From positions 62,001 through 126,000 of IMG/VR virus record IMGVR_UViG_3300032782_000001: DNA of 64,000 nt; one strand, written 5' to 3'. The notes under the pieces were generated by a model. It was not told where the DNA came from, did no database searches, and worked only from the letters and a program-made list of their open reading frames with translations. Both the position numbers and the translations under genes were made by a program. Positions 35,797-51,107 of this stretch are shown here, one piece after another. Every line of letters starts with the position of its first letter. Position 1 is the first letter of the stretch.

Positions 35797-36027
35797 AGCC
35801 CAGACAAAGGTGCAGGGCTTCGATCTCTGACAATCTAACGCAGAGCGATTGAGAAGGCTCAAGGCAGCTGGAAGTTGCCAAAAGTCTTCAAACCGGGAGC
35901 TTCATGCCGCAGCCAGGTGGAAGGTGTGGAGCTCCCGGGAACCGAACTCGTGTCGGTTCAGGTCTGAAAATAACCAACGGTGGGTCCCGAAAGGGTTAGC
36001 GGGTTCGACTCCCGCTTTCAGATCCAT

Positions 36028-36329
36028 TCCAGGATAGCCAAGCGGAAAGGCAGGTGGCTGTCGATAAGGCAGCGTCTTGGGGTGACCCAAGATGGAAAAT
36101 CGGGTGAATTCAAGGAACCCTAAACCGGAAGGTATGGGAACCCTGAGCCAAGCCGGTCGAGGACAAAAGTAGACCGGAAGGTGCAGAGACTAGGAGGTGA
36201 GCAGTCCAGCGATAAACTCCACTAGCGCCCGACGTCCCTCGAGGACGATGAGATAGTCCACGCCTTGAGGAAACTCAAGGGCTTCGTGTAACCACCCTAC
36301 CGCAGGTTCGAATCCTGCTCCTGGAGCCA
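36028..36329 (+). tRNA. tRNA-Asn(GTT) interrupted by a group I intron
   Basis: exons 36028-36061 and 36289-36329 join to GGTGG-CTGTTAA-CCACC; U1-A72, G73, CCA. Confidence 0.85.
36062..36288 (+). mobile_element. group I intron (no ORF) at anticodon position 35/36
   Basis: P1 GCTGT|C pairs with GGCAGC giving the U.G splice pair; core elements GAATTCAAGGAA, AACCCTGAGCCAAG, GTGCAGAGACT, GATAGTCC; terminal G. Confidence 0.88.
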
Positions 36330-36352
36330 TTACAAGCTCGGTAATGTCCTTC

Positions 36353-36886
36353 ATGGACAAAGCCGAGAAACGTCGGAGGACCGCAATCCTCGTCACTGAT
36401 TTTCGACGTCGAATCAAGGAGAAAGCTGTCTCCTATAAAGGTGGTCAGTGCCAGAAATGCGGATACGACAAATGCGTGGCCGCTCTCAGTTTCCACCATC
36501 GTGATCCGAAAGAAAAGGAGTTCCGGCTCTCTTCAGGAAGGACTAAGAATTGGGAGAAGGTCAAGAAGGAGCTCGACAAATGCGATCTCCTTTGCGCGAA
36601 TTGTCACATGGAAGTCCATGATCAGTGGAAGCGAGAGGCTCGGGAACAGCACGAAGCGGAAATCGTTTCTCGTCGCCGCCGGCCAAAGACTTCTCGGGTT
36701 CATAAAGCTCCGGTGATTCGACCCTGGCCTGAATCCGACGAACTGCGGCATCTCGTAGAGACTACTCCGATCACTCATATTGCAAAAATGGTGGGGGTGT
36801 CCGATAAAGCAGTGCTGAAGCGATGTAAGAAGCTTGACATCGCGACTCACCCCGCAGGATTTTGGGCCCGTAAAAAGGCCGCTTGA
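36353..36886 (+). CDS. HNH endonuclease with C-terminal HTH
   Basis: CQKCGY..ALSFHHRDP..KCDLLCANCH. Confidence 0.85.
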   Translation: MDKAEKRRRTAILVTDFRRRIKEKAVSYKGGQCQKCGYDKCVAALSFHHRDPKEKEFRLSSGRTKNWEKVKKELDKCDLLCANCHMEVHDQWKREAREQHEAEIVSRRRRPKTSRVHKAPVIRPWPESDELRHLVETTPITHIAKMVGVSDKAVLKRCKKLDIATHPAGFWARKKAA

Positions 36887-36888
36887 AT

Positions 36889-36963
36889 GGTGACGAAGCT
36901 CAATGGTAGAGCAGCAAGTTGTTAACTTGTCGGAAGAAGGTTCGATTCCTTCCGTCATCGCCA
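36889..36963 (+). tRNA. tRNA-Asn(GTT)
   Basis: CAAG-TTGTTAA-CTTG, GCCA end. Confidence 0.85.
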
Positions 36964-37334: not shown

Positions 37335-37367
37335 GGCACTCACAAGCCTAGAATTGTGAGAAAGTAT

Positions 37368-37494
37368 GGGGAAGAAGGGCACGGCGCCCAGTCCGCTGTT
37401 AACGGAACAAACCCGGCATCGCACCTCGCTCTTGAAAGAGAGCATCAAGCGGTTCCTACAAGCTAATCAGGTTCGACTCCTGACTTCCCCGCCA
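37368..37494 (+). ncRNA. tRNA-mimic RNA 2 (GTT loop)
   Basis: same insert; GGGGAAG/CTTCCCC acceptor, GCCA. Confidence 0.8.
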
Positions 37495-37523
37495 GCCGGT
37501 TACGGGCTTTAAACGTGACGAAT

Positions 37524-37656
37524 GAGGGACAAGGGCACGGCGCCCACCAGCCATCCAAGCTGGCCGCAAGGCACAACTCGGCATCGCACCTCGCTTTCGC
37601 AAGGAAGCACTCAGCGGTTCCTACAAGCATACCAGGTTCGACTCCTGGGTCCCTCT
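37524..37656 (+). ncRNA. tRNA-mimic RNA 3 (TCC loop)
   Basis: same insert; GAGGGAC/GTCCCTC acceptor. Confidence 0.8.
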
Positions 37657-37691
37657 CGAAGCCTTGGTCACAGGCTTTAAACGTGATGAAT

Positions 37692-37827
37692 GAGGAAGAA
37701 GGGCATGGCGCCCACCCGGTCAATAAAACCGGTGCCTAAAAAGCACCCGGCATCGCACCTCGCTTTCGCAAGGAAGCACCAAGCGGTTCCTACAAGCAAA
37801 GTTGGTTCGAATCCAGCCTTCCTCACC
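37692..37827 (+). ncRNA. tRNA-mimic RNA 4
   Basis: same insert; GAGGAAG/CTTCCTC acceptor. Confidence 0.8.
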
Positions 37828-37950
37828 GAGACGTCCATTACGTGCTGCTTACAAGCAAAATGCTCAACGGTAGAGCATCTGATCGGAACTCAGAGAGAAG
37901 TGGGTTCAACTCCCACTTTGCAAAAATCAGCAGCGCAACTCGGACGTCTC
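37828..37950 (+). ncRNA. tRNA-mimic RNA 5 (module extends the acceptor stem)
   Basis: GAGACGTCC/GGACGTCTC ends, GCTGCT/AGCAGC stem, TACAAGC, then D, anticodon-like and T arms. Confidence 0.7.
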
Positions 37951-37989
37951 AAACCTTTTGGCCGATCATGAATCGGTCTGACAGATTAC

Positions 37990-38111
37990 GGGGAAATTGG
38001 GCACGGCGCCCGCCACCTTGAACAAGTGGTTGAATCCGGCACTGCATCTCGGTCCTGTAAGGGATCAATCAGCAGTTCCCACAAGCGAGGTTCGACTCCT
38101 CTTTTCCCCCA
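37990..38111 (+). ncRNA. tRNA-mimic RNA 6 (covariant module)
   Basis: CCGGCACTGCATCTC-GGTCCT/GGGATC-GCAGTTCCCACAAGC insert. Confidence 0.75.
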
Positions 38112-38116
38112 ATTTC

Positions 38117-39570: not shown

Positions 39571-39718
39571 GGTCAAAGAAGCGAGATTGTCGACATCTGC
39601 CGTATTTCCGCGAGGTATGGCTGCTTCTAACCTGACAATTTTCGCCCCTGGAGCCAAGATTCGCTTGGCGGGGTGCACGCAGAGACAGAGAAAGCGGGGC
39701 TGGCAACCCCACAAACCC

Positions 39719-40889
<1,171 letters not shown>

Positions 40890-40923
40890 ACTGCGAATAC
40901 TGGTCCACCTGGTAGAGTGCTCC

Positions 40924-41733
40924 ATGGGTACTCCCAGGTGGACTGTTTACTGCCATACGCACGTTGCAACTGGCCGTCGCTACATCGGGCTTACGAAGCT
41001 CACGATGATGAAGCGGTGGAACCAACACCTTCGCGATTCGCGGTTGAAGGTCGGTAAAGGATGTCGCCACCTTTGGAACGCTATCCGTGCTTACGGGAAG
41101 GATGCGTTCTCGCACGAGGTGCTCGAGATCTGCACGAATCTCGAAGTAGCAAATCTCGCGGAAAAATGTTGGATCGAGTTACACGACACTAGGAACTCCA
41201 AAAAAGGCTTCAATTTGATGCGCGGCGGTGGTCATACACCTCACCCGAACAGGAATCCTTGGGATCGTCCCGAGTATCGAGTCAGGTCCTCTGCCGCTTC
41301 CAAGAAGAAGTTCGAAAATCCGGCGTTTCGAATGAGTCAAATTCAAAGGTTGAAAGCACTGGCAGACGACCCAAAGAATCGGGCGGCTGTCAAAGCAGCT
41401 CTAAATTTACCTGAATCCAAAGCCAAACGGTCTGACATCTCTAAAGAGATTAGAAGTCGGCCGGAAGTTGTAGCGCGCATGACTGAAGTGCGCAGTTCAC
41501 CGGAGTTTAAAAGTAGGCATCGAGAAGCCTGTTCGAAGGCGATGTCGCGGCCAGAAGTCAAGGAGAAAGTGTCATTGGCTTCCAAAGCCATGTGGGCGGA
41601 TCGCAGGCCGACTCACTGCAAACGTGGCCACCCACTGGATGACGCTTATGTCGGCAAGAACGGTAATCGAACTTGCCGCCCATGCCGGAAACTCCGGGCC
41701 AATGAATCCACCACTGTAAAAGAACAGAGTTAG
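40924..41733 (+). CDS. GIY-YIG homing endonuclease with repeated DNA-binding helices
   Basis: TVYCHT...YIGLT..RW..H, E..WI...GFN; C-terminal HCKRGH..CRPC. Confidence 0.85.
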   Translation: MGTPRWTVYCHTHVATGRRYIGLTKLTMMKRWNQHLRDSRLKVGKGCRHLWNAIRAYGKDAFSHEVLEICTNLEVANLAEKCWIELHDTRNSKKGFNLMRGGGHTPHPNRNPWDRPEYRVRSSAASKKKFENPAFRMSQIQRLKALADDPKNRAAVKAALNLPESKAKRSDISKEIRSRPEVVARMTEVRSSPEFKSRHREACSKAMSRPEVKEKVSLASKAMWADRRPTHCKRGHPLDDAYVGKNGNRTCRPCRKLRANESTTVKEQS

Positions 41734-41742
41734 TTGAAACAT

Positions 41743-41811
41743 ACGTCCGAGCCAAGGTGGCAACGTGGCCTCCAAAACCACGGAAGCGGGGTTCGATTCC
41801 TCCCGGGCGTG
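41743..41811 (+). tRNA. tRNA-Trp(CCA), short D arm
   Basis: CTCCAAA loop, GGTTCGATTCC. Confidence 0.7.
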
Positions 41812-41951
41812 CTGGTGAGTTCGAAATCACCGAGGAACGGTGTCTAGCGGGGAAATAGCGCGGGCGGCCTAGGTCGTCGGTTCTGAACCACCCGTCGTCC
41901 TTCTCTCTTACGGGAGAAAAGCTTCTGCAGGAGCAAGTAGGCACCACCAAT

Positions 41952-42023
41952 GGGGTTGTAGCATAGCGGGAATGCGACGTGCTCGGCAAGCACGGGACGC
42001 GGGTTCGAATCCCGCTGACTCCA
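41952..42023 (+). tRNA. tRNA-Ala(GGC)
   Basis: G3.U70, TCGGCAA loop. Confidence 0.8.
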
Positions 42024-42036
42024 CTAAAGTAGTAAC

Positions 42037-42073
42037 GGGGCCATAACATAGCGGGAATGTGCGTCCTTCGCAC
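42037..42073 (+). pseudogene. 5' half of tRNA-Ala(CGC), truncated after the anticodon loop
   Basis: GGGGCCATAACATAGCGGGAATGTGCGTCCTTCGCAC, then unrelated sequence. Confidence 0.6.
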
Positions 42074-42092
42074 AACTCAGTAACGTTCCATC

Positions 42093-42675
42093 ATGGATTT
42101 CATCATTTCTACCGAATGGGATGGTAAACCTCGCAAGCTCTTCCCGAAGAAATGTGAAATATGTACTCGTGTCTTTTATCGTCCCAAACATCATTTAGGA
42201 AAGGCGCGTTTTGTGATCCGAAGTGCGCTATTAAAGGGAGGGAGAAGAAGATCAAGCTAGCTTGCAATCAATGTAAGAATTCGTTCTTCCGGACTCCGAG
42301 TGGAGTTGACTCTCCCCGTGGGCAGTACAGATTTTGTTCTCGTCGATGCAAAGACGAGGCTCAGAAGATTGACGGAGTCTTCCAACAAACCCACGCCAAG
42401 AATGGTTTCAGTTCATATCGCGATCGTGCCCTCCGAGAACACGGGAGTCTTGTTTTGCGTGCGGATATGATAAAGACGAACGCATGCTTGACGCCGATCA
42501 TGTGAACGGTGATCGAAGCAACAGCAAGAAGGGAAACTTGCAAGTGCTTTGTGTATGGTGTCATGCACTAAAGACCAGAAAAGTTCAATATCACGAATGG
42601 GCCCCTAGTTTAACTGGGAAAATTGCCGCCTCGCACGCGGTAGACGGCGGGTTCGACTCCCCCGGGGTCCACTAG
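42093..42675 (+). pseudogene. HNH endonuclease split over three frames (two apparent 1-nt deletions)
   Basis: CEIC, FCSRRC, CFACGY, DADHVNGDRSN..NLQVLCVWCH across frames. Confidence 0.7.
42599..42671 (+). tRNA. tRNA-Ala(CGC)
   Basis: G3.U70; CCGC-CTCGCAC-GCGG; followed by an orphan T-arm/acceptor 3' remnant at 42674-42698. Confidence 0.75.
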
Positions 42676-42712
42676 TTCGACTCCCCGGCGGTCCACCATT
42701 GTAACGTCGGAT

Positions 42713-43000
42713 ATGCCTGTCGCATACTCCGAACCACTGGAGAAGGAGGAATTTGTCCTCCATGTAGCCTATGAGGCCTTCCGGGGCCTCATGCGATTCC
42801 ACAATCACTGGGGCCATCAGGACTTCTACAAACTCGATCTATCGTTACAGAAGAAGTTGGTGGCCGCGGTAGACGCAGCCGTTCGTGGAGATAAACCGAA
42901 CCCCGTCTGGAATGGATCCTGGAGTCAGGATGACGCTTGGGACCTATTCATCGACATGTCACGCAAGATGGCAACTCTTATCGGCTACACGGTGAAGTAA
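42713..43000 (+). CDS. hypothetical protein
   Basis: TAACGT-N5-ATG start. Confidence 0.65.
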   Translation: MPVAYSEPLEKEEFVLHVAYEAFRGLMRFHNHWGHQDFYKLDLSLQKKLVAAVDAAVRGDKPNPVWNGSWSQDDAWDLFIDMSRKMATLIGYTVK

Positions 43001-43139
43001 GATGTATGCTGGATGATCATCCGGTCCAGTCATGAAGTTTGGACCGGAAGTTCTTGGAGAAGAACTGATGATCTCCAAATTGGAGATTCTATCCGAGGAC
43101 CTAGTGGTAAGATGACAACTGTCTTAAAATTTACGTAAT

Positions 43140-43214
43140 GGGCCTTTAGCTCAGTGGGAGAGCACTTCGCTGGCAGCGAAGGGGTCGCGAGTTCAACTCT
43201 CGCAAGGTCCACCA
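43140..43214 (+). tRNA. tRNA-Ala(GGC)
   Basis: cloverleaf, CCA. Confidence 0.9.
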
Positions 43215-43234
43215 CTCTCACCGTAAAGTCTGTC

Positions 43235-43456
43235 ATGGCTGGGATCTGTTCTCGTCATCGGTCTGAGATCCCGGTTCCGGGATGCAAACAGTGTGCAGCG
43301 CATCCACGCGACATCTTCCCAGATTGGGACGAGAAGGTCAAACAAGCTGAAGCCTCTGGAATCCACGTTTGCGAATGCGGATTCAAATACTACAAGACGA
43401 TCGACTTCTGTCCGTTATGCGGAAAGAAAATGTCTATGAACAAAACGGGTCCGTAG
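43235..43456 (+). CDS. small Cys-rich protein
   Basis: TAAAGT-N5-ATG; CKQC, CECG, CPLCG. Confidence 0.6.
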   Translation: MAGICSRHRSEIPVPGCKQCAAHPRDIFPDWDEKVKQAEASGIHVCECGFKYYKTIDFCPLCGKKMSMNKTGP

Positions 43457-43520
43457 TTCAGCGGGAGAACGTCAGCTTTGCAAGCTGAATGTCGCCGGTT
43501 CGATTCCGGCCGGATCCACC
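43447..43520 (+). tRNA. tRNA-Ala(TGC)
   Basis: cloverleaf. Confidence 0.9.
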
Positions 43521-43613
43521 GGGTCAGAGGACTGATACCCTTACTAGTGAGACGACAGTCAAGCAGCCCGGCCGATGGGCATCGCTTGATGCCCATCGGC
43601 AGAATACTCGTTC

Positions 43614-43832
43614 ATGAAACTGCATAACTGGGTCAGAGTCCCCATGACGGCGCAAGATTTCGGACAAAATTGGTCCGATGAGCCCCTTAAGGAAAACGAA
43701 GGGAGATATGAATGTGATGGGTGCGGTCTCAGTGTCCTAATATGGGATGGTGAAACCGTAGAGGATCTGGAAGACCGTGGAATTTCAAATGACTGCGAGT
43801 TGGAACTCGTAAGACAAGTCATGCAAAGTTAG
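43614..43832 (+). CDS. HxW-CxxCG protein with VMQS tail
   Basis: HNW...CDGCG...DC; ends VRQVMQS*. Confidence 0.65.
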   Translation: MKLHNWVRVPMTAQDFGQNWSDEPLKENEGRYECDGCGLSVLIWDGETVEDLEDRGISNDCELELVRQVMQS

Positions 43833-43835
43833 TTT

Positions 43836-43911
43836 GCCGGCTTAGTCCTCGTGGGAGGGCACCTCCTTGGTATGGAGGATCAGGCGGGTTCGACTCCCGC
43901 AGCCGGCTCCA
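43836..43911 (+). tRNA. tRNA-Thr(GGT)
   Basis: cloverleaf, CCA. Confidence 0.85.
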
Positions 43912-43940
43912 CTCTCGCCACCCTGTATGGTGAGGGGAAT

Positions 43941-44012
43941 GCGGGCGTAGCCAAGTGGTAAGGCTCGGGGTTTCCAACCCCGCATTCGCGCGTTCGAATC
44001 GCGTCGCCCGCT
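43941..44012 (+). tRNA. tRNA-Gly(TCC)
   Basis: cloverleaf. Confidence 0.85.
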
Positions 44013-44034
44013 CGAGATCCGGTTCCAATCCGGG

Positions 44035-44231
44035 ATGCCAGTCATACCACTTCACTGCTACGTAGGGCATTCTGGAAGGAGGAAGTACAGTCTGGAAGAA
44101 TGCGAATTCTTGGTTGGATACGACGTTCGCTCCGACATCGCATACGTCCTCGCGTATGAAGAATTCTCCGGCAGAAAGTCCATGGTCTCAGTAAGCCCCG
44201 AGTCCGAGGAACGATGGGATAAGATTCGAAT
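44035..44231 (+). pseudogene. C-terminal fragment of a PD-(D/E)xK homing-endonuclease-like gene
   Basis: YSLEECEFLVGYD...YV...EERWDKI resembles the C-terminus of that family; N-terminus absent. Confidence 0.4.
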
Positions 44232-44302
44232 GCGGGTGTAGCTCGAAGGTCGAGCACTTGGTTGCCATCCAAGAGGGGCGGGTTCGATTCCCGTCACCCG
44301 CT
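44232..44302 (+). tRNA. tRNA-Gly(GCC)
   Basis: cloverleaf. Confidence 0.9.
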
Positions 44303-44383
44303 CTGAGAGCTGGTTTGGGTCCCTTTCAATCAAGGTTGCAGGCGACCCAGCCCGCTCTCTCCAGTTCGTTGTAGAGTAGAACT

Positions 44384-44502
44384 GCGCGGATAGCTCAGAC
44401 GGAGTGGATCGGCCGGGTCCCGAGGCGCCTCGGTTCGGCCGGGAAGCCCACCAGAGCACCTTCCTGTTAGGGAGGAGGACGTCGAAGGACCGACTCCGCG
44501 CC
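44384..44502 (+). ncRNA. tRNA-like RNA with a large D-loop insertion and degenerate T loop
   Basis: GCGCGGA/TCCGCGC, GCTC/GAGC, CCTTC-CTGTTAG-GGAGG. Confidence 0.55.
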
Positions 44503-44513
44503 TTTGTTGAAAC

Positions 44514-44587
44514 GCGGGTGAGGCCGATTGGTAAGGCAACAGTTTCCCATACTGTTTCATGTGGGTTCAATTCCCATCACCCGCTCC
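44514..44587 (+). tRNA. tRNA-Gly(CCC)
   Basis: cloverleaf. Confidence 0.85.
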
Positions 44588-44672
44588 GGTGTCACTGCTC
44601 GCATTCAGGTCCCTAAACCTGAAAGTGAAGGCCCACAGGTTTAGGGACCTGGAAGTCCTGTGACATCGCCAT

Positions 44673-44744
44673 GGCCCGTTTCTCCGGCGAGGAGTTTGGT
44701 CTGCAAAACCGAACGCGACGGTCCAACTCCGTCACGGGCCTCCA
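44673..44744 (+). tRNA. tRNA-Cys(GCA)
   Basis: CTGCAAA loop, U73, CCA. Confidence 0.8.
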
Positions 44745-44777
44745 GTAATGGCAGTAAGTTCACTGTAGGGTAGTTCC

Positions 44778-46046
44778 GTGGAACACTCAATTGAGACGTT
44801 AGGCAACGGCATTACTTTCGTCGTTCTTCGGAATCCGGCACTTCAAACCATGGTCGCCATGGTCGGCGTAAAAGTGGGTTCGAGATATGAAGCGAAAGAA
44901 ATGCAAGGCGCTTCTCATTTCATTGAGCACATGATGTTCAAAGGGACGAAAAAGTATCCTTCGAGCAAAGCGCTTTCTGAAATCATCGATGCTCGGGGTG
45001 GTGAGCATAATGCCTATACAGACAAGGAACTGACGAATTTTTACGTCAGGATGGCAAAATCATGCGGAGATGTTGCAGTCGATCTCGTTCATGACATGAT
45101 TGCTAACTCTCTCTTCCGGACTTCGGACGTAGAAAAAGAGCGTCCGGTCATCCAAGAAGAGATCTCCGGATATGACAACAACCCGGACCATAATGCCTGG
45201 GAGCTTTCTGAACGGGTCGCTTACAAGGGTTCAGGACTCGAACACCCGATCGCGGGTTCTGTGGAAAGCGTTACTTTCCCCGCCAATTCCCTTCGCAAAT
45301 TTTTTCGAAAGCATTACGTGCCGTCTCGAATGGCCGTTGTCCTTTCAGGAGCTGTCGATGATAAGCTAGTGGCTACTGCCCAGGAGAAATTTTCTAGTAT
45401 TCCCATGGAAGAAGTCGATACTGGCTACGATATGGCCAGTATGCCGAAAGGTGGATTGGACTTCAAAGTAGGTAATACTGACAAAATCCATTTTGTAATC
45501 CGGCTGCCTGGAACGGCATACGGGGCTCCGTATGCTAGAATGACAGATATCCTGTCTGTTGTTTTGGGTGGATACATGTCAGCCCGTCTTTTCCAGTCTC
45601 TTCGAGACAAACACGGGCTTTGCTATGGAGTATTCGCATTCCCGCACCATTATTCTGACACGGGGTCACTGCTCATTGGAACTTCTCTCGACAGGAAAAA
45701 TTTCCCGAAAGCGCTTGAAGTTCTCGTGAAGGAACTTTGGAAAATCTCCAAAAAAGGCGTCACAGAGAAGGAACTTCAAACGGTCAAAGATCACATCCGC
45801 GGCGTTAAATCAATGGACATGGATAGGCCAATGGGTCTTGCCGCTGATGCCATTTTGCAACTCTTCATGAGCCGCACGTACGAAACCCCTGAAGAGGATA
45901 TGGCGAAGTACCAAGAGGTTACGCTGAATGATGTAAATGTTCAGGCGTCAGGAGTAAAGCCGACTGCGCATGGCATGCACATCGCCGTGGTCGGGCCGAA
46001 AGGAGCAGAAAAAGAAGTTCGTAAGGCATACGAAGCAGCGTTGTAA
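44778..46046 (+). CDS. M16 (pitrilysin-family) zinc peptidase
   Basis: GSRYE, HFIEHMMFKGT, NAYTDKE, LGGYMSARLFQ.LRDKHGLCY. Confidence 0.93.
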   Translation: MEHSIETLGNGITFVVLRNPALQTMVAMVGVKVGSRYEAKEMQGASHFIEHMMFKGTKKYPSSKALSEIIDARGGEHNAYTDKELTNFYVRMAKSCGDVAVDLVHDMIANSLFRTSDVEKERPVIQEEISGYDNNPDHNAWELSERVAYKGSGLEHPIAGSVESVTFPANSLRKFFRKHYVPSRMAVVLSGAVDDKLVATAQEKFSSIPMEEVDTGYDMASMPKGGLDFKVGNTDKIHFVIRLPGTAYGAPYARMTDILSVVLGGYMSARLFQSLRDKHGLCYGVFAFPHHYSDTGSLLIGTSLDRKNFPKALEVLVKELWKISKKGVTEKELQTVKDHIRGVKSMDMDRPMGLAADAILQLFMSRTYETPEEDMAKYQEVTLNDVNVQASGVKPTAHGMHIAVVGPKGAEKEVRKAYEAAL

Positions 46047-46051
46047 ATAAT

Positions 46052-46127
46052 GCCCCTGTGGCCGAGCGGACAAGGCGGCGGTCCTCTAAATCGCACAACG
46101 CAGGTTCGATTCCTGCCAGGGGTACCA
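46052..46127 (+). tRNA. tRNA-Arg(TCT)
   Basis: GCGGT-CCTCTAA-ATCGC, A20, CCA. Confidence 0.8.
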
Positions 46128-46186
46128 GGCGCTTCCGGAGGGAAGCTTGGAAAAGGTTGCTGATCCTTTCCTGAAATCAGCGTCAT

Positions 46187-46263
46187 GTCCCCATCGTCTA
46201 GCTGGCCTAGGACGCTAGCCTCTCACGCTGGTAACCGGGGTTCGAATCCCCGTGGGGACGCCA
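46187..46263 (+). tRNA. tRNA-Glu(CTC)
   Basis: cloverleaf, CCA. Confidence 0.9.
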
Positions 46264-46264
46264 T

Positions 46265-46340
46265 GCTCCCATCTGCTAACGGCTCAGGCAACTTGATTCT
46301 CGATCAAGGAATGAGGGTTCGACTCCCTCTGGGAGTGCCA
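46265..46340 (+). tRNA. tRNA-Glu(CTC)
   Basis: cloverleaf, CCA. Confidence 0.85.
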
Positions 46341-46611
46341 TGAAGATGAAAGAAGAAGGTGTGCCTCCCTAGGGAGGCACACCTTGCACATCAATCACCG
46401 TCGAAAGAACAAGTTCCGAGGCAAGCACCACGGATACTTCGGATACCCAAACGTCTACAGTCTCAAGCCATTCAAGGTCATGGACGCTCAAAAGCGCCGT
46501 GCCCGAGAACGGGCCTTCATGTCGAATGGCAAATTCGATATGCTTCCAATCAGATTCCAGAAGGATCTACTCTGGAACTATTGGTAAAACGTAGGCCCGA
46601 AAGGGCCTTAT

Positions 46612-46687
46612 GCCCCCACAGCACGACGGATCGTGCAACGCGCTACGAACGCGGAGGCTGAAGGTTCAAATCCTTCTGGGGGCACCA
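46612..46687 (+). tRNA. tRNA-Arg(ACG)
   Basis: cloverleaf, CCA. Confidence 0.85.
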
Positions 46688-46688
46688 T

Positions 46689-46761
46689 GCCTTCATGGCG
46701 CAATGGATAGCGCAGCGCGCTTCGAACGCGAAGGTTGGAGGTTCAAGTCCTCCTGGAGGCA
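46689..46761 (+). tRNA. tRNA-Arg(TCG)
   Basis: cloverleaf. Confidence 0.9.
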
Positions 46762-46972
46762 CTACCGATTCACAAACCTTTTCAAGCGCGACCACCAAAC
46801 AAGAATAGAGCTGGTCGCTACCACGAAAAGCAACAAGAGTGATTGTTTGGATGCCGCCCACGAACGGAAAGAAAGGTGGATAGTGAGCCGGTCACCTTTA
46901 CCGGTCCCGTTTGGGATCCTCACAATATCTTGCAGTTTGTGAGCGTTGTAGTTCATATCGGAACGGTACGAT

Positions 46973-47041
46973 CTCCCTGCCGGCGGATCCGGCGGCGACC
47001 CTCCGAAGGTCGCTTTACAAGTTCGACTCTTGTCAGGGAGG
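46973..47041 (+). tRNA. tRNA-Arg(CCG)-like, compact D arm and extended anticodon stem
   Basis: CTCCCTG/CAGGGAG; GCGACC-CTCCGAA-GGTCGC; GTTCGACTC. Confidence 0.55.
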
Positions 47042-47046
47042 CTGTG

Positions 47047-47120
47047 TGTCAGAGTGGAGCAGTGGCAGCTTGTTGGGCTCATAACTCAAAGGTCGAAGGT
47101 TCGAATCCTTCCTCTGACCC
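47047..47120 (+). tRNA. tRNA-Met(CAT), initiator-like
   Basis: GGG-CTCATAA, 1:72 mismatch. Confidence 0.8.
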
Positions 47121-47198
47121 CGCGGGCGAGTGAAACGGTTACATTCCGGGCTCATAACCCGTGAGACAGCGAGGTTCGACTCCTCGTGCCCGCAACCA
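47120..47198 (+). tRNA. tRNA-fMet(CAT)
   Basis: C1:A72, GGG/CCC anticodon stem, CCA. Confidence 0.8.
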
Positions 47199-47289
47199 AA
47201 TCCTCTCTAGGTAGTCAGGATTCAGTTCCTGTCATAGCGTGCAGGGAGAGGGGAAGTCCGGATAGAGTGCACGTATTCCGGACATCAAT

Positions 47290-47364
47290 CGCAGGTAGGC
47301 TCTACGGTTGAGCAGTCGTTTCATACGCGACCACCAGCGGGTTCGACTCCCGCACCTGCGACCA
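47290..47364 (+). tRNA. tRNA-Met or Ile2 (CAT)
   Basis: GTCGT-TTCATAC-GCGAC, CCA. Confidence 0.75.
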
Positions 47365-47376
47365 GTAACGTCCCCC

Positions 47377-47697
47377 GTGGATCGTCAATTTACGACAGCT
47401 TCTCAGCTTGTCGTCGATATGCAACGAATTCTCCGGGAGAACCCGAAGGCCGTTGCAGAGTTAGAACGAGATCAAAGACGTTTACTGCTCATTTTCCGAT
47501 GCGGTGGAGTTTGTTGGAATGTCCTCAGAACACGAGCACAGTCTGTTTCTCCGACCGATTTCAGAATTTTGTTCGAACATCAAGATCTTATACTGGCTGC
47601 CATTAATAGGAGGATGTGCTTGAGGTCAGTAGGATTGAAAGAATGTGACTGCGGAAATGAGAGTTTGCATATCGTAGCCGATGTACAACTCTCATAG
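47377..47697 (+). CDS. hypothetical protein with variant tail (VADVQLS)
   Basis: ORF after the tRNA; ends CDC...IVADVQLS*; start uncertain. Confidence 0.5.
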   Translation: MDRQFTTASQLVVDMQRILRENPKAVAELERDQRRLLLIFRCGGVCWNVLRTRAQSVSPTDFRILFEHQDLILAAINRRMCLRSVGLKECDCGNESLHIVADVQLS

Positions 47698-47705
47698 AGG
47701 TCATC

Positions 47706-48017
47706 ATGAATTGGAAACTATGGCTTGATGATCAAATGCTCGACAATGAGGCGCCAGATCGTCACTGCCCTGAGGGTTTCTTTGGTGCCCGGAGTACGGG
47801 CGAGGCGCAACGTCTCTGCTTGATGGCAGGACCTCCATCCTTCGTCGATTTCGACCACGATCTTGGTGGATCTGACGATGCTTTGGTGTTCCTCCATTGG
47901 TTGGAGAAGTCGTTCCCGGATACCCCTCCCGAGTATCAAATCCATTCGGCCAATCCCGTTGGCCGGGAGAGGATCGTGTCGTTTCTGGAGAGTTGGAAGA
48001 AAAGTTTGCAATTGTAA
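47706..48017 (+). CDS. cyclic-phosphate-processing receiver-domain protein
   Basis: KLWLDD, DFDHDLG, IHSANPVG motifs. Confidence 0.8.
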   Translation: MNWKLWLDDQMLDNEAPDRHCPEGFFGARSTGEAQRLCLMAGPPSFVDFDHDLGGSDDALVFLHWLEKSFPDTPPEYQIHSANPVGRERIVSFLESWKKSLQL

Positions 48018-48018
48018 T

Positions 48019-48092
48019 CAGGGTGTAGCTCAGCCTGGTAGAGCACCGCGTTCGGGACGCGGGTGTCGGAGGTTCGATTCCTCTCACCCTGA
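48019..48092 (+). tRNA. tRNA-Pro(CGG)
   Basis: cloverleaf. Confidence 0.9.
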
Positions 48093-48104
48093 CTATTTTT
48101 TTGT

Positions 48105-48179
48105 GCCCGATTAGCTCAGAGGTAGAGCACTGGCTTTACAAGCCGGCTGCCGGGGGTTCGATTCCCTCATCGGGTACCA
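48105..48179 (+). tRNA. tRNA-Val(TAC)
   Basis: cloverleaf, CCA. Confidence 0.9.
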
Positions 48180-48180
48180 T

Positions 48181-48219
48181 GGGCAGATAGTTCAATCGGT
48201 CAGAACCCCCGCCTCATAA
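48181..48219 (+). pseudogene. 5' half of a CAT tRNA, truncated after the anticodon loop
   Basis: GGGCAGATAGTTCAATCGGTCAGAACCCCCGCCTCATAA, then stops. Confidence 0.65.
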
Positions 48220-48222
48220 TAT

Positions 48223-48299
48223 GGGGCAGTGAACGTAATCGGTGAACGTCCTCGCCTCATAAGCGAGTTCATGTGGATTCGAATCCCACCTGCCCTACC
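48223..48299 (+). tRNA. tRNA-Ile2/Met (CAT)
   Basis: CTCGC-CTCATAA-GCGAG. Confidence 0.75.
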
Positions 48300-48329
48300 T
48301 CGTCGGCATTATAAACACTGGTACCGTTT

Positions 48330-48698
48330 ATGATGCCGAATAAGGACCCTATTGTCCGGAAAGAACACCATCGAAACTATATGAAGAATGTCTGGCTGAA
48401 AAAGCCAGAGAATAGAGAAGCTCACATTTGTCGAGTCCGTGCCGTAAGCAAACGTCGTGATGCAGCGGCGAAGCAATTACTTGCAGAATTCCGATCAGGA
48501 GGTTGCAAGCAATGTGGAGAACTGGACGAATCATGTCTAGTAGCTCACCACATAGACCCTTCGGAGAAGGAATTCAATGTGAGCCATGCGATGAGGCGAT
48601 CACTGAAAGCAATCGCACGTGAATTGGCGAAATGCATATGCCTTTGCATGAACTGCCATGCTAAACTCCATGCTGGCCGAATTACCATCCCAGAATGA
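48330..48698 (+). CDS. HNH endonuclease
   Basis: CKQCG..LVAHHIDP..KCICLCMNCH. Confidence 0.85.
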   Translation: MMPNKDPIVRKEHHRNYMKNVWLKKPENREAHICRVRAVSKRRDAAAKQLLAEFRSGGCKQCGELDESCLVAHHIDPSEKEFNVSHAMRRSLKAIARELAKCICLCMNCHAKLHAGRITIPE

Positions 48699-48702
48699 AA
48701 AT

Positions 48703-48777
48703 GCCGGCTTCGCTCTCAGGGAGAGCACCTTCCTCACGCGGAGGACTAGGAGGGTTCGAGTCCCTCAGCCGGTACCA
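48703..48777 (+). tRNA. tRNA-Val(CAC)
   Basis: cloverleaf, CCA. Confidence 0.8.
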
Positions 48778-48778
48778 C

Positions 48779-48853
48779 GGGGAGATCGTATAATGGTTAG
48801 TACCCATGTCTGATAAACATGGAATCCGGGTTCAATTCCCGGTCTCCCCACCA
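48779..48853 (+). tRNA. tRNA-Ile(GAT)
   Basis: cloverleaf, CCA. Confidence 0.9.
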
Positions 48854-48855
48854 AT

Positions 48856-48930
48856 GCCGGCTTCGTTCTCTGGGAGAGCACCACTGTGACAAGGTGGATT
48901 AGGAGAGTTCGATTCTCTCAGCCGGTACCA
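48856..48930 (+). tRNA. tRNA-Val(GAC)
   Basis: cloverleaf, CCA. Confidence 0.8.
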
Positions 48931-48944
48931 ATGTAAATCAGTTC

Positions 48945-49208
48945 ATGAGCGGGAAGAAGCCAACCCACGAACTGTGCGTGAAGGACCTTGAAACTCAGGA
49001 TCGTGGTAGGATCGGTGTCGCTTGGGAGAATGAAGACGGATCTTTCACGATCAAACTTCACCCTTGTACATCGATCACTTATGATAACGTGAAGAATAAG
49101 GCTTTATCTTTGTTTCCCCTCCGATCTGAAGCAGAATGGGCAAAATGGCAGGCTGCAAGGGCAGCTCGAGAGGCCAAAAAAGCTGCGGCTGGAGACCCTC
49201 AAGAGTAA
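48945..49208 (+). CDS. hypothetical protein
   Basis: RIGVAWENEDGS motif ORF. Confidence 0.65.
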   Translation: MSGKKPTHELCVKDLETQDRGRIGVAWENEDGSFTIKLHPCTSITYDNVKNKALSLFPLRSEAEWAKWQAARAAREAKKAAAGDPQE

Positions 49209-49962: not shown

Positions 49963-50364
49963 ATGGGAATCATCGGAGAATTCCTCAAGAGGCGTCGCAG
50001 GGATGGCGCAAAAGCTGACTCCGAACGTGGGCTCACCAACGAATGGAGAGTCTGGAAAGTTCTCCAACGTCCTAGTCGACCGTGGTGGATCACGAATGTT
50101 CGCATGTCGACCGTCGCTGAAGATCATCATGGTATCGATGTTGTCGTTGAGACATCGGATTACGGGGATCTCTACCTCCAAGTCAAGAGCTCGCTTAGGG
50201 GAGCAAAGGAATTTCGCAGCAAAAGTCGTAGTGTTCGTGTGGACATCGAAGTCGTGGTGGTTGCACGAACGGATGATGCTAACACGTTGTATGGAAAGAC
50301 TCTTGGCGCTCTGATTCTCCTTAGAGAGAGGTTGGATGCAATGAGTTCTGGACTCGTGGGATAA
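49963..50364 (+). CDS. PD-(D/E)xK-like nuclease
   Basis: GGAGG SD; E...ED..GIDVVV...LQVKSS. Confidence 0.65.
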   Translation: MGIIGEFLKRRRRDGAKADSERGLTNEWRVWKVLQRPSRPWWITNVRMSTVAEDHHGIDVVVETSDYGDLYLQVKSSLRGAKEFRSKSRSVRVDIEVVVVARTDDANTLYGKTLGALILLRERLDAMSSGLVG

Positions 50365-50430
50365 AGGCGAATGGCACAGCCTGCCGGTTTAAGCCCGGTT
50401 CCTTTGCGGGTTCGAGTCCCGCCGGGTCTA
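50350..50430 (+). tRNA. tRNA-Leu(TAA), enlarged D region
   Basis: GCCGG-TTTAAGC-CCGGT. Confidence 0.7.
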
Positions 50431-50594: not shown

Positions 50595-51107
50595 ATGAAC
50601 GCGCAGACGCTCCTCCTAACCCCCTGGTGCAGTCCGCACAAGGTCGTCCCCTGGCAGAAAGCTGTCACGATGCTCTATACGGGCGACGTGGAGGTACTCC
50701 AGGAGTACGACGAGACCATTCGATCGCCTTCGATCAGCATGAAAATGCCGGCCGTCGTGCGACTCAAGAAGTCCGTAGGAAGCGTCAAGCGCGGCGTGAA
50801 GTTCTCACGTCTCAATGTTCTCATCCGTGATGGGTATCGCTGCCAGTATTGCGGTGCTCGCAAGGAAGCTCACGAACTCAACTACGATCACGTCATCCCG
50901 CGTAAGCAGGGTGGTAAGACCGTCTGGGAGAACATCGTGGCTGCCTGCTACCCCTGCAACTCTCGGAAGAGTGATAGGACCCCGGAGCAAGCAGGCATGA
51001 CGCTTCTCTCGAAGCCGCACAAGCCGAAGACCCTCCCGCTCGTAGGAGCAAGGATCGACTCTCGTACGGCGCATCCAGTCTGGGCTTCCTGGCTCGGCGC
51101 AGCGTGA
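50595..51107 (+). CDS. HNH endonuclease (McrA-like)
   Basis: SRLNVLIRDGYRCQYCG, DHVIPR..GG..WENIV.AC..CN.RK. Confidence 0.92.
   Translation: MNAQTLLLTPWCSPHKVVPWQKAVTMLYTGDVEVLQEYDETIRSPSISMKMPAVVRLKKSVGSVKRGVKFSRLNVLIRDGYRCQYCGARKEAHELNYDHVIPRKQGGKTVWENIVAACYPCNSRKSDRTPEQAGMTLLSKPHKPKTLPLVGARIDSRTAHPVWASWLGAA

What the first reader, a model, noticed from the sequence alone, without database searches (positions are those of the whole stretch)
42037..48698. Homing-endonuclease cassettes that break a tRNA at the anticodon and supply a replacement isoacceptor
Case 1: a 5' half of tRNA-Ala(CGC) ends just after the anticodon (42037-42073). It is followed by an HNH gene, a complete but different tRNA-Ala(CGC) (42599-42671) and an orphan T-arm/ACCA remnant (42674-42698). 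Case 2: a 5' half of a CAT tRNA ends after CTCATAA (48181-48219), followed by a complete different CAT tRNA (48223-48299) and an HNH gene (48330). The Asn / HNH / Asn and Gly / nuclease fragment / Gly arrangements may be further cases. Inference: intronless homing units of endonuclease plus immune tRNA allele. This could also explain the isotype clustering in the island.
Basis: partly seen in the sequence, partly recalled or inferred. Interest (0 to 1): 0.65.

Follow-up and report, generated by a model that had tools for sequence, protein, structure and literature searches.

The report
HNH homing genes that split tRNA genes
In a 436-kb wetland phage, selfish HNH nuclease genes sit beside tRNA genes cut off just after the anticodon loop, each with an intact tRNA of the same anticodon next door; the same layout recurs in unrelated phages, so it looks like a general way that phage tRNA genes get replaced.

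Summary
Both 5' tRNA halves (42037-42073 Ala-CGC; 48181-48219 CAT) stop exactly after tRNA nucleotide 38. Each lies next to an HNH gene and an intact tRNA with the same anticodon. An independent assembly at about 44x spans case 2.

Corrections:
- The case-1 HNH is a pseudogene with at least two frameshifts.
- The first Asn gene carries a 227-nt ORF-less group I intron in its anticodon loop.
- The Gly "nuclease fragment" has no support.

No close relative exists, so empty sites could not be defined. Recurrence supports the core idea instead.
- The closest homologue of the case-2 HNH (52% identity) sits inside a split CAT tRNA that is also broken after CTCATAA.
- In at least 9 of 62 viral loci with related HNH genes, an intact CAT tRNA ends 1-120 nt upstream of the HNH.
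- In 21 loci the upstream tRNA is tRNA-Asn. The window's Asn-linked HNH falls in that clade.
- The order [5' half][HNH][intact same-anticodon tRNA] recurs for Val, Lys and Trp.

Best reading: tRNA-gene-specific free-standing HNH homing elements linked to a tRNA copy, which leave tRNA scars. Cleavage and immunity are untested. This is a new variant of SegB-type homing.

The parts
36027..36061 (+). tRNA-Asn(GUU) 5' exon (ends ...GGCUGU)
   Evidence: U36061 pairs with G36069 as the U.G wobble in P1.
36062..36288 (+). ORF-less group I intron (227 nt) between anticodon positions 35 and 36
   Evidence: RF00028 scores 76.6 bits against a gathering score of 50, E 3e-18. The terminal G is at 36288. ARAGORN in intron mode finds the same 227-nt insert.
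36289..36332 (+). tRNA-Asn 3' exon (UAACCACC...GCCA)
   Evidence: Read from the sequence, exon by exon. The acceptor stem pairs 7 of 7, and G73 plus CCA are present.
36344..36886 (+). Free-standing HNH gene (180 aa), 11 nt after the intron-containing tRNA-Asn and 2 nt before the second tRNA-Asn
   Evidence: phrog_2255 E 2.5e-29. It falls in the Asn-linked HNH clade, support 99/95.
36889..36963 (+). Second, intronless tRNA-Asn(GTT); at most 65% identical to any other tRNA of the island, the first Asn included
40837..41733 (+). GIY-YIG (Seg-like) homing endonuclease gene between the EF-Tu-like gene and a tRNA-Trp-like gene
   Evidence: PF01541 E 5e-7 and phrog_314 E 5e-25.
41952..42024 (+). tRNA-Ala(GGC), the closest paralogue of half 1
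42037..42073 (+). Orphan 5' half of a tRNA-Ala(CGC), nt 1-38, ending after the loop TTCGCAC
   Evidence: No matching 3' half was found and no intron.
42093..42608 (+). HNH pseudogene. Two zinc-finger-like repeats (C-x2-C...FC-x3-C) are followed by an HNH core at 42445-42597. At least two frameshifts lie near 42205-42215 and 42440-42447. The reading frame runs into the tRNA; the TAG at tRNA nt 8-10 (42606-42608) is in frame with the ATG at 42093.
42599..42672 (+). Intact tRNA-Ala(CGC), about 58% identical to half 1 by my own count
42674..42698 (+). Orphan Ala-type 3' piece (T-loop, acceptor strand with T70, A73, CCA)
48105..48179 (+). tRNA-Val(TAC); half 2 starts 1 nt after its CCA, in array register
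48181..48219 (+). Orphan 5' half of a CAT tRNA, nt 1-38, ending after CTCATAA
48223..48299 (+). Intact CAT tRNA, homeologous to half 2 (same D-loop core and anticodon loop, different self-complementary D-stems)
48300..48329 (+). Spacer with GGCATTATAA 15 nt before the ATG; possibly a decayed CATAA remnant, at the same spacing as in L019
   Evidence: Weak: 3 mismatches in 11.
48330..48698 (+). Intact free-standing HNH gene (122 aa), 4 nt before tRNA-Val(CAC)
   Evidence: phrog_3106 E 1e-21.
50595..51107 (+). Further HNH gene (PF01844) between tRNA-Leu(CAA) and tRNA-Pro(GGG); no scars seen

Best explanation
The tRNA island of this huge phage is colonised by free-standing homing-endonuclease genes. 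One HNH family (phrog_2255/3106 type) is specialised on tRNA genes.

Proposed mechanism
1. Each such HNH gene is physically tied to one tRNA gene. It lies either just downstream of it (the CAT and Asn types) or just upstream of it, with the ORF ending inside the first 10-15 nt of the tRNA (the Val, Lys, Trp, Gly and Ala types).
2. Inferred: the enzyme cuts HNH-free alleles of that same tRNA gene in co-infecting relatives, in or next to the region coding the anticodon stem-loop.
3. Inferred: the break is repaired from the HNH-bearing genome, which copies in the HNH gene together with its linked tRNA allele.
4. Where the two tRNA alleles are too diverged for a homologous crossover inside the gene, one junction is illegitimate. 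The resident gene then survives only as a 5' half (nt 1 to 38-41) and/or a T-loop-to-CCA end.
5. The imported intact tRNA keeps decoding capacity.

At the Asn locus the conflict is solved in another way. [quoted passage not shown]

Shown: the anatomy, its recurrence, the truncation positions, and the link between HNH clade and tRNA isotype. Inferred: the cleavage site, homing, and immunity of the linked allele.
For: In the window
- Both halves stop after tRNA nt 38 and lie 19 nt and 110 nt from an HNH start.
- Their D-stems are perfectly paired but differ in sequence from the intact partner's. So they come from once-functional homeologous genes, not from decayed copies of the partner.
- Homing-endonuclease genes are enriched. 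Five of about 15 such loci lie in the 17.8-kb island, which is 4% of the genome. My own binomial estimate is about 2e-4.

In other contigs
- L011 carries the closest homologue of the case-2 HNH (52% identity). The order there is [CAT 5' half ending CTCATAA][6 nt][HNH][T-loop-to-CCA piece at the stop codon]. The two acceptor strands pair at 6 of 7 positions and there is no ribozyme.
- Of 62 IMG/VR loci with related HNH genes, 44 show a tRNA or a tRNA fragment within 1.5 kb.
- An intact CAT tRNA ends 1-120 nt upstream of the HNH in 9 loci, and a tRNA-Asn ends upstream in 21.
- CATAA remnants lie 15-19 nt before the ATG in L019 and L022. 3' pieces follow the stop directly in L017 and L025.
- The order [5' half][HNH][intact same-anticodon tRNA overlapped by the ORF end] occurs in L033 (Val-TAC), L073 (Lys-CTT) and L072 (Trp-CCA).
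- T-loop motifs outside called tRNAs are about 5-fold enriched just after HNH stop codons.
- On the HNH tree the Asn label needs 2 changes, against a shuffled mean of 8.4 (0 of 500 shuffles as low). The window's Asn-linked HNH sits inside that clade.
- Cultured phages show the ORF-tRNA overlap: Erwinia phage Hena1 (stop codon = tRNA-Lys nt 8-10) and cyanophage S-RIM50 (tRNA-Gly).

Precedent: SegB cuts tRNA genes and drags flanking tRNA genes along (PMC2330249).
Against: - No cleavage data exist for any member of this HNH family.
- No HNH-free allele of this phage was found. A second wetland sample holds the same arrangement at about 99% identity and low depth.
- Three or four paralogues of the same HNH family elsewhere in this genome are not near tRNAs. 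18 of the 62 related loci show no tRNA or fragment within 1.5 kb.
- In case 1 the 3' remnant does not pair with the 5' half (4 of 7), so at least two events are needed.
- Half 2 is in the gap next to the HNH gap, not in it. Adjacency within the window alone is only modestly significant, about 0.03-0.08 by my own estimate.
- The 62 loci were fetched with two peptide patterns and include many near-identical contigs.
- Redundant same-anticodon pairs also occur without a neighbouring nuclease gene (Glu-CTC x2, Leu-GAG x2).
Confidence: 0.62

Rival explanations
1. Plain birth and death of redundant tRNA genes. Tandem duplicates or acquired duplicates decay by random deletion. The nuclease genes merely accumulate in tRNA arrays because insertions there are tolerated.
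For: - Many adjacent isoacceptor pairs are each other's best match at 71-81% identity.
- Redundant same-anticodon pairs exist without any nuclease gene.
- Other tRNA-like debris occurs in the island away from nuclease genes.
Against: - Both halves are cut at the same nucleotide.
- The same cut, with the same-anticodon partner and an HNH gene, recurs in at least six unrelated contigs for five isotypes.
- HNH clades track tRNA isotype.
Confidence: 0.15
2. Nuclease-driven segmental amplification followed by collapse, the 'accordion' shown for SegB in phage T6. Repeat units of tRNA plus nuclease gene were made and later partly deleted, leaving partial copies.
For: [quoted passage not shown]
- Here, and in L033, L072, L073, Hena1 and S-RIM50, the HNH ORF runs into the 5' end of a tRNA.
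- In L072 the half is 87% identical to the intact copy (my own count).
Against: - In the window the half and the intact partner are only about 58% and 69% identical, with different D-stems, so they are not recent copies of one unit.
- No tandem repeats of the unit are present.
- The ORF-tRNA overlap is conserved across distant phages, so it is a stable design rather than a transient junction.
Confidence: 0.1
3. The halves are functional. They could be exons of split or intron-containing tRNAs, tRNAs nested as in Lak megaphages, or small decoy RNAs released from the tRNA precursor.
For: - A real group I intron interrupts tRNA-Asn in the same island.
- Lak megaphages have tRNA 'introns', one of which may encode a tRNA (PMC6784885).
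- Half 2 lies in register in the array, so it would be transcribed and could be cut out by RNase P and 3' processing (inference).
Against: - No complementary 3' half exists anywhere in the 436-kb genome.
- ARAGORN in intron mode finds no partner within 1200 nt.
- No group I or group II remnant appears in either locus even at permissive thresholds.
- No RNA data were obtainable.
Confidence: 0.05
4. Assembly artefact: strain variants of one tRNA were joined in tandem.
For: The source is a metagenome assembly, and the tRNA-Glu(CTC) pair does break the Logan contigs.
Against: - An 83.5-kb Logan contig covers 46234-48949 without a difference at about 44x.
- All sampled 31-mers of 41900-48950 are present in the run.
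- Repeats shared by half and partner are at most 12 nt.
- The same architecture is seen in many independent assemblies.
Confidence: 0.01

Closest known systems
SegB of phage T4/T6 (free-standing GIY-YIG homing endonuclease in the tRNA gene cluster; PMC2330249, PMC13096335)
   Same: - A free-standing nuclease gene inside a phage tRNA array.
- It cuts within tRNA genes and transfers itself together with flanking tRNA genes, replacing those of the recipient.
- Homologues are often tRNA-linked.
   Different: - A different nuclease fold (GIY-YIG, not HNH).
- SegB recognises the generic T-loop motif of many tRNAs. Here each HNH clade is tied to one isotype, and the scars point to the anticodon stem-loop boundary.
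- Orphan halves with a same-anticodon partner, and the ORF-tRNA overlap, are not described for SegB.
[quoted passage not shown]
   Same: At the Asn locus an ORF-less intron interrupts a conserved site and a free-standing HNH gene lies 11 nt downstream. The same layout occurs at tRNA(CAU) in Rak2-like jumbo phages.
   Different: - The host gene is a phage tRNA, not a protein gene. The 2014 review states that all phage introns then known were in protein-coding genes.
- Cleavage at the insertion site is untested.
[quoted passage not shown]
   Same: A homing endonuclease whose target is the anticodon region of a CAU tRNA gene.
   Different: It is encoded inside a self-splicing intron, so the tRNA stays functional, and it has a PD-(D/E)XK fold. 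Here there is no ribozyme and the tRNA is destroyed or replaced.
Integrase-borne islands and prophages that integrate into tRNA genes and carry a copy of the displaced part (my own general knowledge, not tested here)
   Same: The inserted element brings tRNA sequence that keeps an intact gene, and leaves an orphan tRNA fragment at the other border.
   Different: No integrase or att-type repeat is present. The orphan is usually the 5' half rather than the 3' end, and the element is a 0.4-0.6 kb nuclease gene.
Lak megaphage tRNA 'introns', one of which may itself encode a tRNA (PMC6784885)
   Same: Huge-phage tRNA genes interrupted near the anticodon loop, with an intact tRNA lying within the interrupted gene. 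Lak genomes also carry homologues of this HNH.
   Different: In Lak both exons are present and the insert is read as an intron. Here the 3' exon is absent and an HNH gene is part of the insert.

Membership tests
Free-standing homing endonuclease gene (intronless homing) | Intact nuclease domain with catalytic motif | tested here: met
   Met for 48330-48698 and 36344-36886 (phrog_3106/2255, E 1e-21 and 2.5e-29). Not met for the case-1 gene, which is frameshifted.
Free-standing homing endonuclease gene (intronless homing) | The gene lies between host genes, outside any intron or intein | tested here: met
   No ribozyme lies in or around either case locus. The ORFs are bounded by tRNA genes.
Free-standing homing endonuclease gene (intronless homing) | Presence or absence among otherwise similar genomes | tested here: inconclusive
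   - This phage has no close relative.
- A second sample has the same allele.
- In distant sets, L024, L026 and L028 have tRNA plus HNH while L027 has the HNH only.
- Muenster lacks the HNH that Turkey5 and OU509535 have at the same slot.
Free-standing homing endonuclease gene (intronless homing) | The enzyme cuts the nuclease-free allele near the insertion site, and the carrier allele is resistant | not testable with these tools
   Needs protein and DNA substrates.
Free-standing homing endonuclease gene (intronless homing) | Biased inheritance with co-conversion of flanking markers in mixed infection | not testable with these tools
   The phage is uncultured. Cultured carriers such as Erwinia phage Hena1 could be used.
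Group I intron (tRNA-Asn locus) | Match to the catalytic core model above the curated threshold | tested here: met
   RF00028 scores 76.6 bits against 50.
Group I intron (tRNA-Asn locus) | U.G pair at the 5' splice site in P1 and a terminal G at the 3' splice site; exons that form a tRNA | tested here: met
   - U36061.G69 and G36288 are present.
- The exons, read one by one, give a 7-bp acceptor stem, the loop CUGUUAA, G73 and CCA.
- ARAGORN's intron mode finds the gene but places the splice 2 nt earlier.
Group I intron (tRNA-Asn locus) | Self-splicing | not testable with these tools
   No RNA runs were available.
Collaborative homing | ORF-less intron with an adjacent free-standing endonuclease gene | tested here: met
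   The intron is 227 nt with no ORF, and the HNH starts 11 nt after the tRNA. The layout recurs in OU509535 and Turkey5.
Collaborative homing | The endonuclease cuts the intronless allele at the intron insertion site | not testable with these tools
   Biochemistry is needed.
Split or intron-containing tRNA (for the two halves) | A 3' half whose acceptor and anticodon-stem strands complement the 5' half | tested here: not met
   Genome-wide pattern search; ARAGORN intron mode up to 1200 nt.
SegB-type segmental amplification unit | Tandem, near-identical repeat units of tRNA plus nuclease gene | tested here: not met
   The half and the intact copy are about 58% and 69% identical, and no repeated unit is present.
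Integrase-mediated insertion into a tRNA gene | An integrase gene and a duplicated 3' tRNA segment as att sites | tested here: not met
   ORFs between and beside the fragments are an HNH gene or unknowns. The duplicated part is the 5' half.

The most novel reading that the evidence does not exclude
HNH-plus-tRNA pairs are autonomous mobile cassettes in which the tRNA acts as cargo and antidote. The nuclease destroys the resident allele of one tRNA gene at the anticodon stem-loop, and the cassette supplies a resistant copy. The two are locked together by the ORF ending in the tRNA's conserved U8-A9-G10. Such cassettes would move tRNA genes between unrelated phages. A lone tRNA(CAT)-HNH pair inside the structural module of SU10-like phages (L024, L026, L028) would be one example. 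They would be a main driver of the origin, redundancy and fast turnover of phage tRNA arrays.
Probability: 0.3. Interest if true: 0.8.

Novelty: new variant of a known kind. Interest (0 to 1): 0.7.

Why it matters
Phage tRNA arrays are usually explained by codon usage or by escape from host tRNA-cleaving defences. How the arrays are built and reshuffled is poorly understood.

Suppose one HNH family homes into specific tRNA genes and carries a replacement copy. Then selfish elements, and not only selection on translation, would shape which tRNA alleles a phage has. That would account for three things seen here:
- redundant same-anticodon pairs;
- pseudo-tRNAs;
- same-anticodon tRNAs of related phages that are as different as unrelated tRNAs.

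The layout also gives a set of candidate nucleases with natural, short, structured targets.

Separately, group I introns do occur in phage tRNA genes, here and unannotated in cultured Rak2-like jumbo phages. A 2014 review noted that none had been seen. All of this can be tested directly in cultured carriers (Hena1, S-RIM50, Turkey5 and Muenster).

Tried and rejected
- Close relatives for empty-site comparison were not found.
  - Megablast and blastn against INPHARED matched only tRNA pieces.
  - The M16 peptidase gave no IMG/VR relative, and its best homologue is 52% identical.
  - Exact 32-mer and 26-mer searches with half 2 found nothing in IMG/VR, and only the source contig in JGI metagenomes.
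- The islands of distant relatives (L002, L006, L007) are too diverged. Same-anticodon tRNAs are 55-70% identical, which is noise level.
- Population variants: the second wetland run holds the same allele at low depth, with no skipping joints that belong to this phage.
- blastn-short of tRNAs against the masked genome was too noisy to use.
- Split tRNA, nested intron and group I or II remnants were rejected.
- The case-1 HNH (frame b) has no homologue by word search. I did not run the exhaustive protein search.
- The Gly "nuclease fragment" has no Pfam or PHROG hit even at E 1.
- Ro60/Y-RNA as an explanation for the tandem tRNA-like repeats: there is no TROVE gene in the genome.
- Base composition of the HNH genes is suggestive only. 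GC3 is 0.44 against 0.45-0.72 for their neighbours.
- Disclosure: I joined the two Asn exons inside a script for a pairwise-identity table. The cloverleaf check was done exon by exon from the sequence, and the joined search step was left out.

Full report
**Setting.** The window is bases 62001-126000 of a 436,316-bp IMG/VR virus record with direct terminal repeats, that is, a huge phage from a wetland metagenome.
- Between 35491 and 53165, ARAGORN tRNA genes, all on the + strand.
- Infernal adds six more tRNAs and one group I intron.
- The island also encodes an EF-Tu-like protein, an M16 peptidase, a cREC_REC domain protein, a HisRS-like fragment and a 3'-5' exoribonuclease.
- It holds five homing-endonuclease genes: HNH at 36344, 42093 (broken), 48330 and 50595, and GIY-YIG at 40837.
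- Genome-wide there are about 15 such loci, so five in 4% of the genome is roughly a 12-fold excess (the binomial estimate of about 2e-4 is my own arithmetic).

**Check of the observation.**
- Half 1 (42037-42073) has an acceptor strand, U8-A9, a paired D-stem, an anticodon 5' stem and the loop TTCGCAC. The expected 3' stem strand does not follow.
- Half 2 (48181-48219) starts 1 nt after the CCA of tRNA-Val(TAC), in array register, and ends with CTCATAA.
- Both therefore stop after tRNA nucleotide 38.
- Each scores 17 in a semi-global comparison with the phage's own tRNA 5' halves. Random genome windows give 6.65 +/- 1.48, and 1 of 4000 reaches 17.
- Half 2 is also the top non-tRNA hit genome-wide for a 5'-half HMM.
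- The remnant at 42674-42698 is an Ala-type 3' end (T70, A73, CCA). It pairs with half 1 at only 4 of 7 acceptor positions and resembles the intact Ala(CGC) more.
- An assembly artefact is very unlikely. All sampled 31-mers of 41900-48950 occur in an independent assembly of the source run. Two of its contigs cover 42950-48949 without a difference at about 44x. I laid 6,000 bases, so case 1 was checked only through the 31-mer share.

**Corrections to the observation.**
- The case-1 HNH is a pseudogene. Its N-terminal part has two C-x2-C...FC-x3-C repeats, and its HNH core covers PF01844 positions 1-46 of 47 (E 0.0018). These lie in three frames, with shifts near 42205-42215 and 42440-42447.
- Its reading frame runs into the intact tRNA-Ala(CGC). 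The TAG formed by tRNA nt 8-10 is in frame with the ATG at 42093.
- "Asn / HNH / Asn" is real, but the first Asn gene is interrupted. A 227-nt ORF-less group I intron (RF00028, 76.6 bits) lies between anticodon positions 35 and 36. It has the U.G wobble at the 5' splice site and a terminal G. ARAGORN's intron mode finds the same insert.
- The exons were checked one by one from the sequence. I sent no joined exon model to any search tool. I did join them once inside a script for an identity table.
- The ORFs between the Gly tRNAs match no nuclease family.

**What the halves are not.**
- No 3' half complementary to either 5' half exists anywhere in the genome.
- ARAGORN's intron mode finds no partner within 1200 nt.
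- Permissive Rfam scans of both loci show no intron remnant.
- So they are not exons or split tRNAs.
- They are also not decayed copies of their intact neighbours. Half 2 and the intact CAT tRNA share the D-loop core and the anticodon loop, yet their D-stems differ in sequence and are each self-complementary. Half 1 is closest to the upstream tRNA-Ala(GGC) (76%).
- Each half therefore comes from a tRNA gene that evolved as a working gene for a long time before it was cut.

**The proposed test was not possible.**
- The best homologue of the central M16 peptidase is 52% identical.
- Related huge-phage islands (L002, L006, L007) share only noise-level tRNA identity.
- Exact searches with half 2 returned only the source contig.
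- A second wetland sample carries the same allele.
- Empty sites therefore cannot be defined for this phage.

**Recurrence gives the answer instead.**
- The closest homologue of the case-2 HNH (P0121, 52% identity) lies on a 5.7-kb contig of 66% GC (L011).
  - It sits inside a split initiator-like CAT tRNA.
  - The 5' half ends exactly after CTCATAA, 6 nt before the ATG.
  - A T-loop-to-CCA piece starts at the stop codon.
  - The two acceptor strands pair at 6 of 7 positions, and there is no ribozyme.
- An alignment of five family members then retrieved 62 IMG/VR loci. Of these, 44 show a tRNA or tRNA fragment within 1.5 kb.
- An intact CAT tRNA ends 1-120 nt upstream of the HNH on the same strand in L017, L019, L020, L022, L024, L025, L026, L028 and L071. 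A tRNA-Asn does so in 21 loci.
- Short remnants of an anticodon 5' stem plus loop ending in CATAA lie 15 and 19 nt before the ATG in L019 and L022. The window has a possible decayed one (GGCATTATAA) at the same 15-nt spacing.
- T-loop-to-CCA pieces follow the stop codon in L017 and L025. In L025 the acceptor strand is identical to that of the intact upstream tRNA, but the T-stem differs.
- The case-1 order [5' half][HNH][intact same-anticodon tRNA] recurs in L033 (Val-TAC), L073 (Lys-CTT) and L072 (Trp-CCA).
  - In L072 the half extends to nt 41 and is 87% identical to the intact copy.
  - In all three the HNH ORF ends 10-15 nt inside the tRNA.
- The same ORF-tRNA overlap is annotated, without comment, in cultured phages. 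In Erwinia phage Hena1 the stop codon is U8-A9-G10 of tRNA-Lys. In cyanophage S-RIM50 the tRNA is tRNA-Gly.

**Phylogeny.**
- On a maximum-likelihood tree of 46 distinct HNH rows, the label "tRNA-Asn upstream" needs 2 changes, against a shuffled mean of 8.4 (0 of 500 shuffles as low).
- The window's Asn-linked HNH sits inside that clade with 99/95 support.
- The CAT-linked genes, the split-CAT gene of L011 and the window's case-2 gene all lie in the other, poorly resolved half of the tree, mixed with genes that have no tRNA nearby.
- Near-identical contigs inflate the Asn counts. I removed identical proteins but not close ones.

**Mechanism.** The most economical reading is that this HNH family consists of free-standing homing endonucleases whose targets are tRNA genes, each lineage tied to one isotype.
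- The positions of the scars point to a break at or next to the 3' edge of the anticodon loop (nt 38-41), and in some cases at the T-loop.
- Repair from the carrier genome would copy the HNH gene and its linked tRNA.
- If the alleles are too different for a crossover inside the gene, the resident gene is left as a stump.
- L011 shows the bare state, a gene destroyed with no replacement.
- The window shows two compensated states, one of them old (dead HNH, extra remnant).
- The Asn locus, and the tRNA(CAU) locus of Rak2-like jumbo phages, show a third solution. [quoted passage not shown]
  - In the jumbo phages the intron is more than 90% conserved while the exons differ.
  - The HNH is present in OU509535 and Turkey5 and absent at that slot in Muenster.
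- All enzymatic steps are inferred.

**Comparison with known systems.**
- SegB of T4/T6 already shows that a free-standing nuclease in a tRNA array can cut tRNA genes, carry flanking tRNA genes into a relative, and drive tRNA amplification (PMC2330249, PMC13096335).
- HNH genes in mycobacteriophage tRNA clusters have been suggested to spread them (PMC6409571).
- In the literature I could search I did not find:
  - the isotype-specific linkage;
  - the truncation at the anticodon loop with a same-anticodon partner;
  - the ORF ending inside the tRNA;
  - group I introns in phage tRNA genes. A 2014 review says none were known (PMC3984707), and the Lak megaphage tRNA introns were left unclassified (PMC6784885).
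- The library is partial, so prior description cannot be excluded.

**Verdict.** The core interpretation is supported by comparative evidence, but its enzymology is untested. The side claims are corrected. I rate it a new variant of a known kind, with interest 0.7.

Noticed in passing
window 37340-38112: Four or more tandem units of about 165 nt. Each is a tRNA-like RNA of about 125 nt with a 7-bp acceptor-like stem (covarying), a D-arm-like hairpin and a canonical T-arm. A long arm capped by a GNRA tetraloop stands in place of an anticodon arm. 8 of 29 pairs show compensatory changes. ARAGORN and Rfam do not call them, and the genome has no Ro60/TROVE gene.
   Followed up: partly
L014 2937-3238 (OU509535), L015 about 1455-1790 (Klebsiella phage Muenster), L016 about 1450-1800 (Escherichia phage Turkey5): Cultured or assembled Rak2-like jumbo phages carry a tRNA(CAU) gene interrupted after CAU by a group I intron of about 230 nt (RF00028, 90-104 bits). 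It is unannotated in all three records. The intron is more than 90% conserved while the tRNA exons differ. A free-standing HNH follows in two of the three.
   Followed up: partly
window 39587-41733: In the EF-Tu-like ORF, domain 3 matches only positions 1-38 of 106. The GIY-YIG homing endonuclease gene starts 68 nt after its stop. The EF-Tu gene may have been truncated by that insertion.
   Followed up: no
window 35961-36024: A mini tRNA-like element (7-bp acceptor stem, T-arm, TCCA end, no D or anticodon arm) lies directly upstream of the intron-containing tRNA-Asn.
   Followed up: no
window 41742-41811 and 50350-50430: Likely tRNA-Trp(CCA) and tRNA-Leu(UAA) genes that ARAGORN misses and Infernal scores weakly. 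With them the island seems to cover nearly all amino acids.
   Followed up: partly
G000 C1 134863-141807 (outside the window): tRNA-Ile(TAT), two tRNAs with a TCA anticodon that ARAGORN labels SeC, and a tmRNA (tag ANDNGALRIAA). Two more HNH genes lie just downstream at 142813 and 144149.
   Followed up: no
L010 11135-11811: In a 410-kb contig, ARAGORN calls two tRNAs with four-base anticodons (tcac, gatg) next to an HNH homologue. A release-factor-like gene is nearby.
   Followed up: no
window 44778-46046: After about 20 huge-phage homologues at 40-52% identity, the M16 peptidase's next relatives (about 36%) are from Patescibacteria. This may be a hint to host or gene origin.
   Followed up: no
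L024, L026, L028 versus L027: In SU10-like phages a lone tRNA(CAT)-HNH pair sits between structural genes. The sister contig L027 has the HNH at the same place without the tRNA.
   Followed up: partly
L023 1284-1435: An intact tRNA-Asn is followed by a second Asn-like gene with a broken acceptor stem, and then by the HNH gene. This is another same-anticodon pair beside this nuclease.
   Followed up: no
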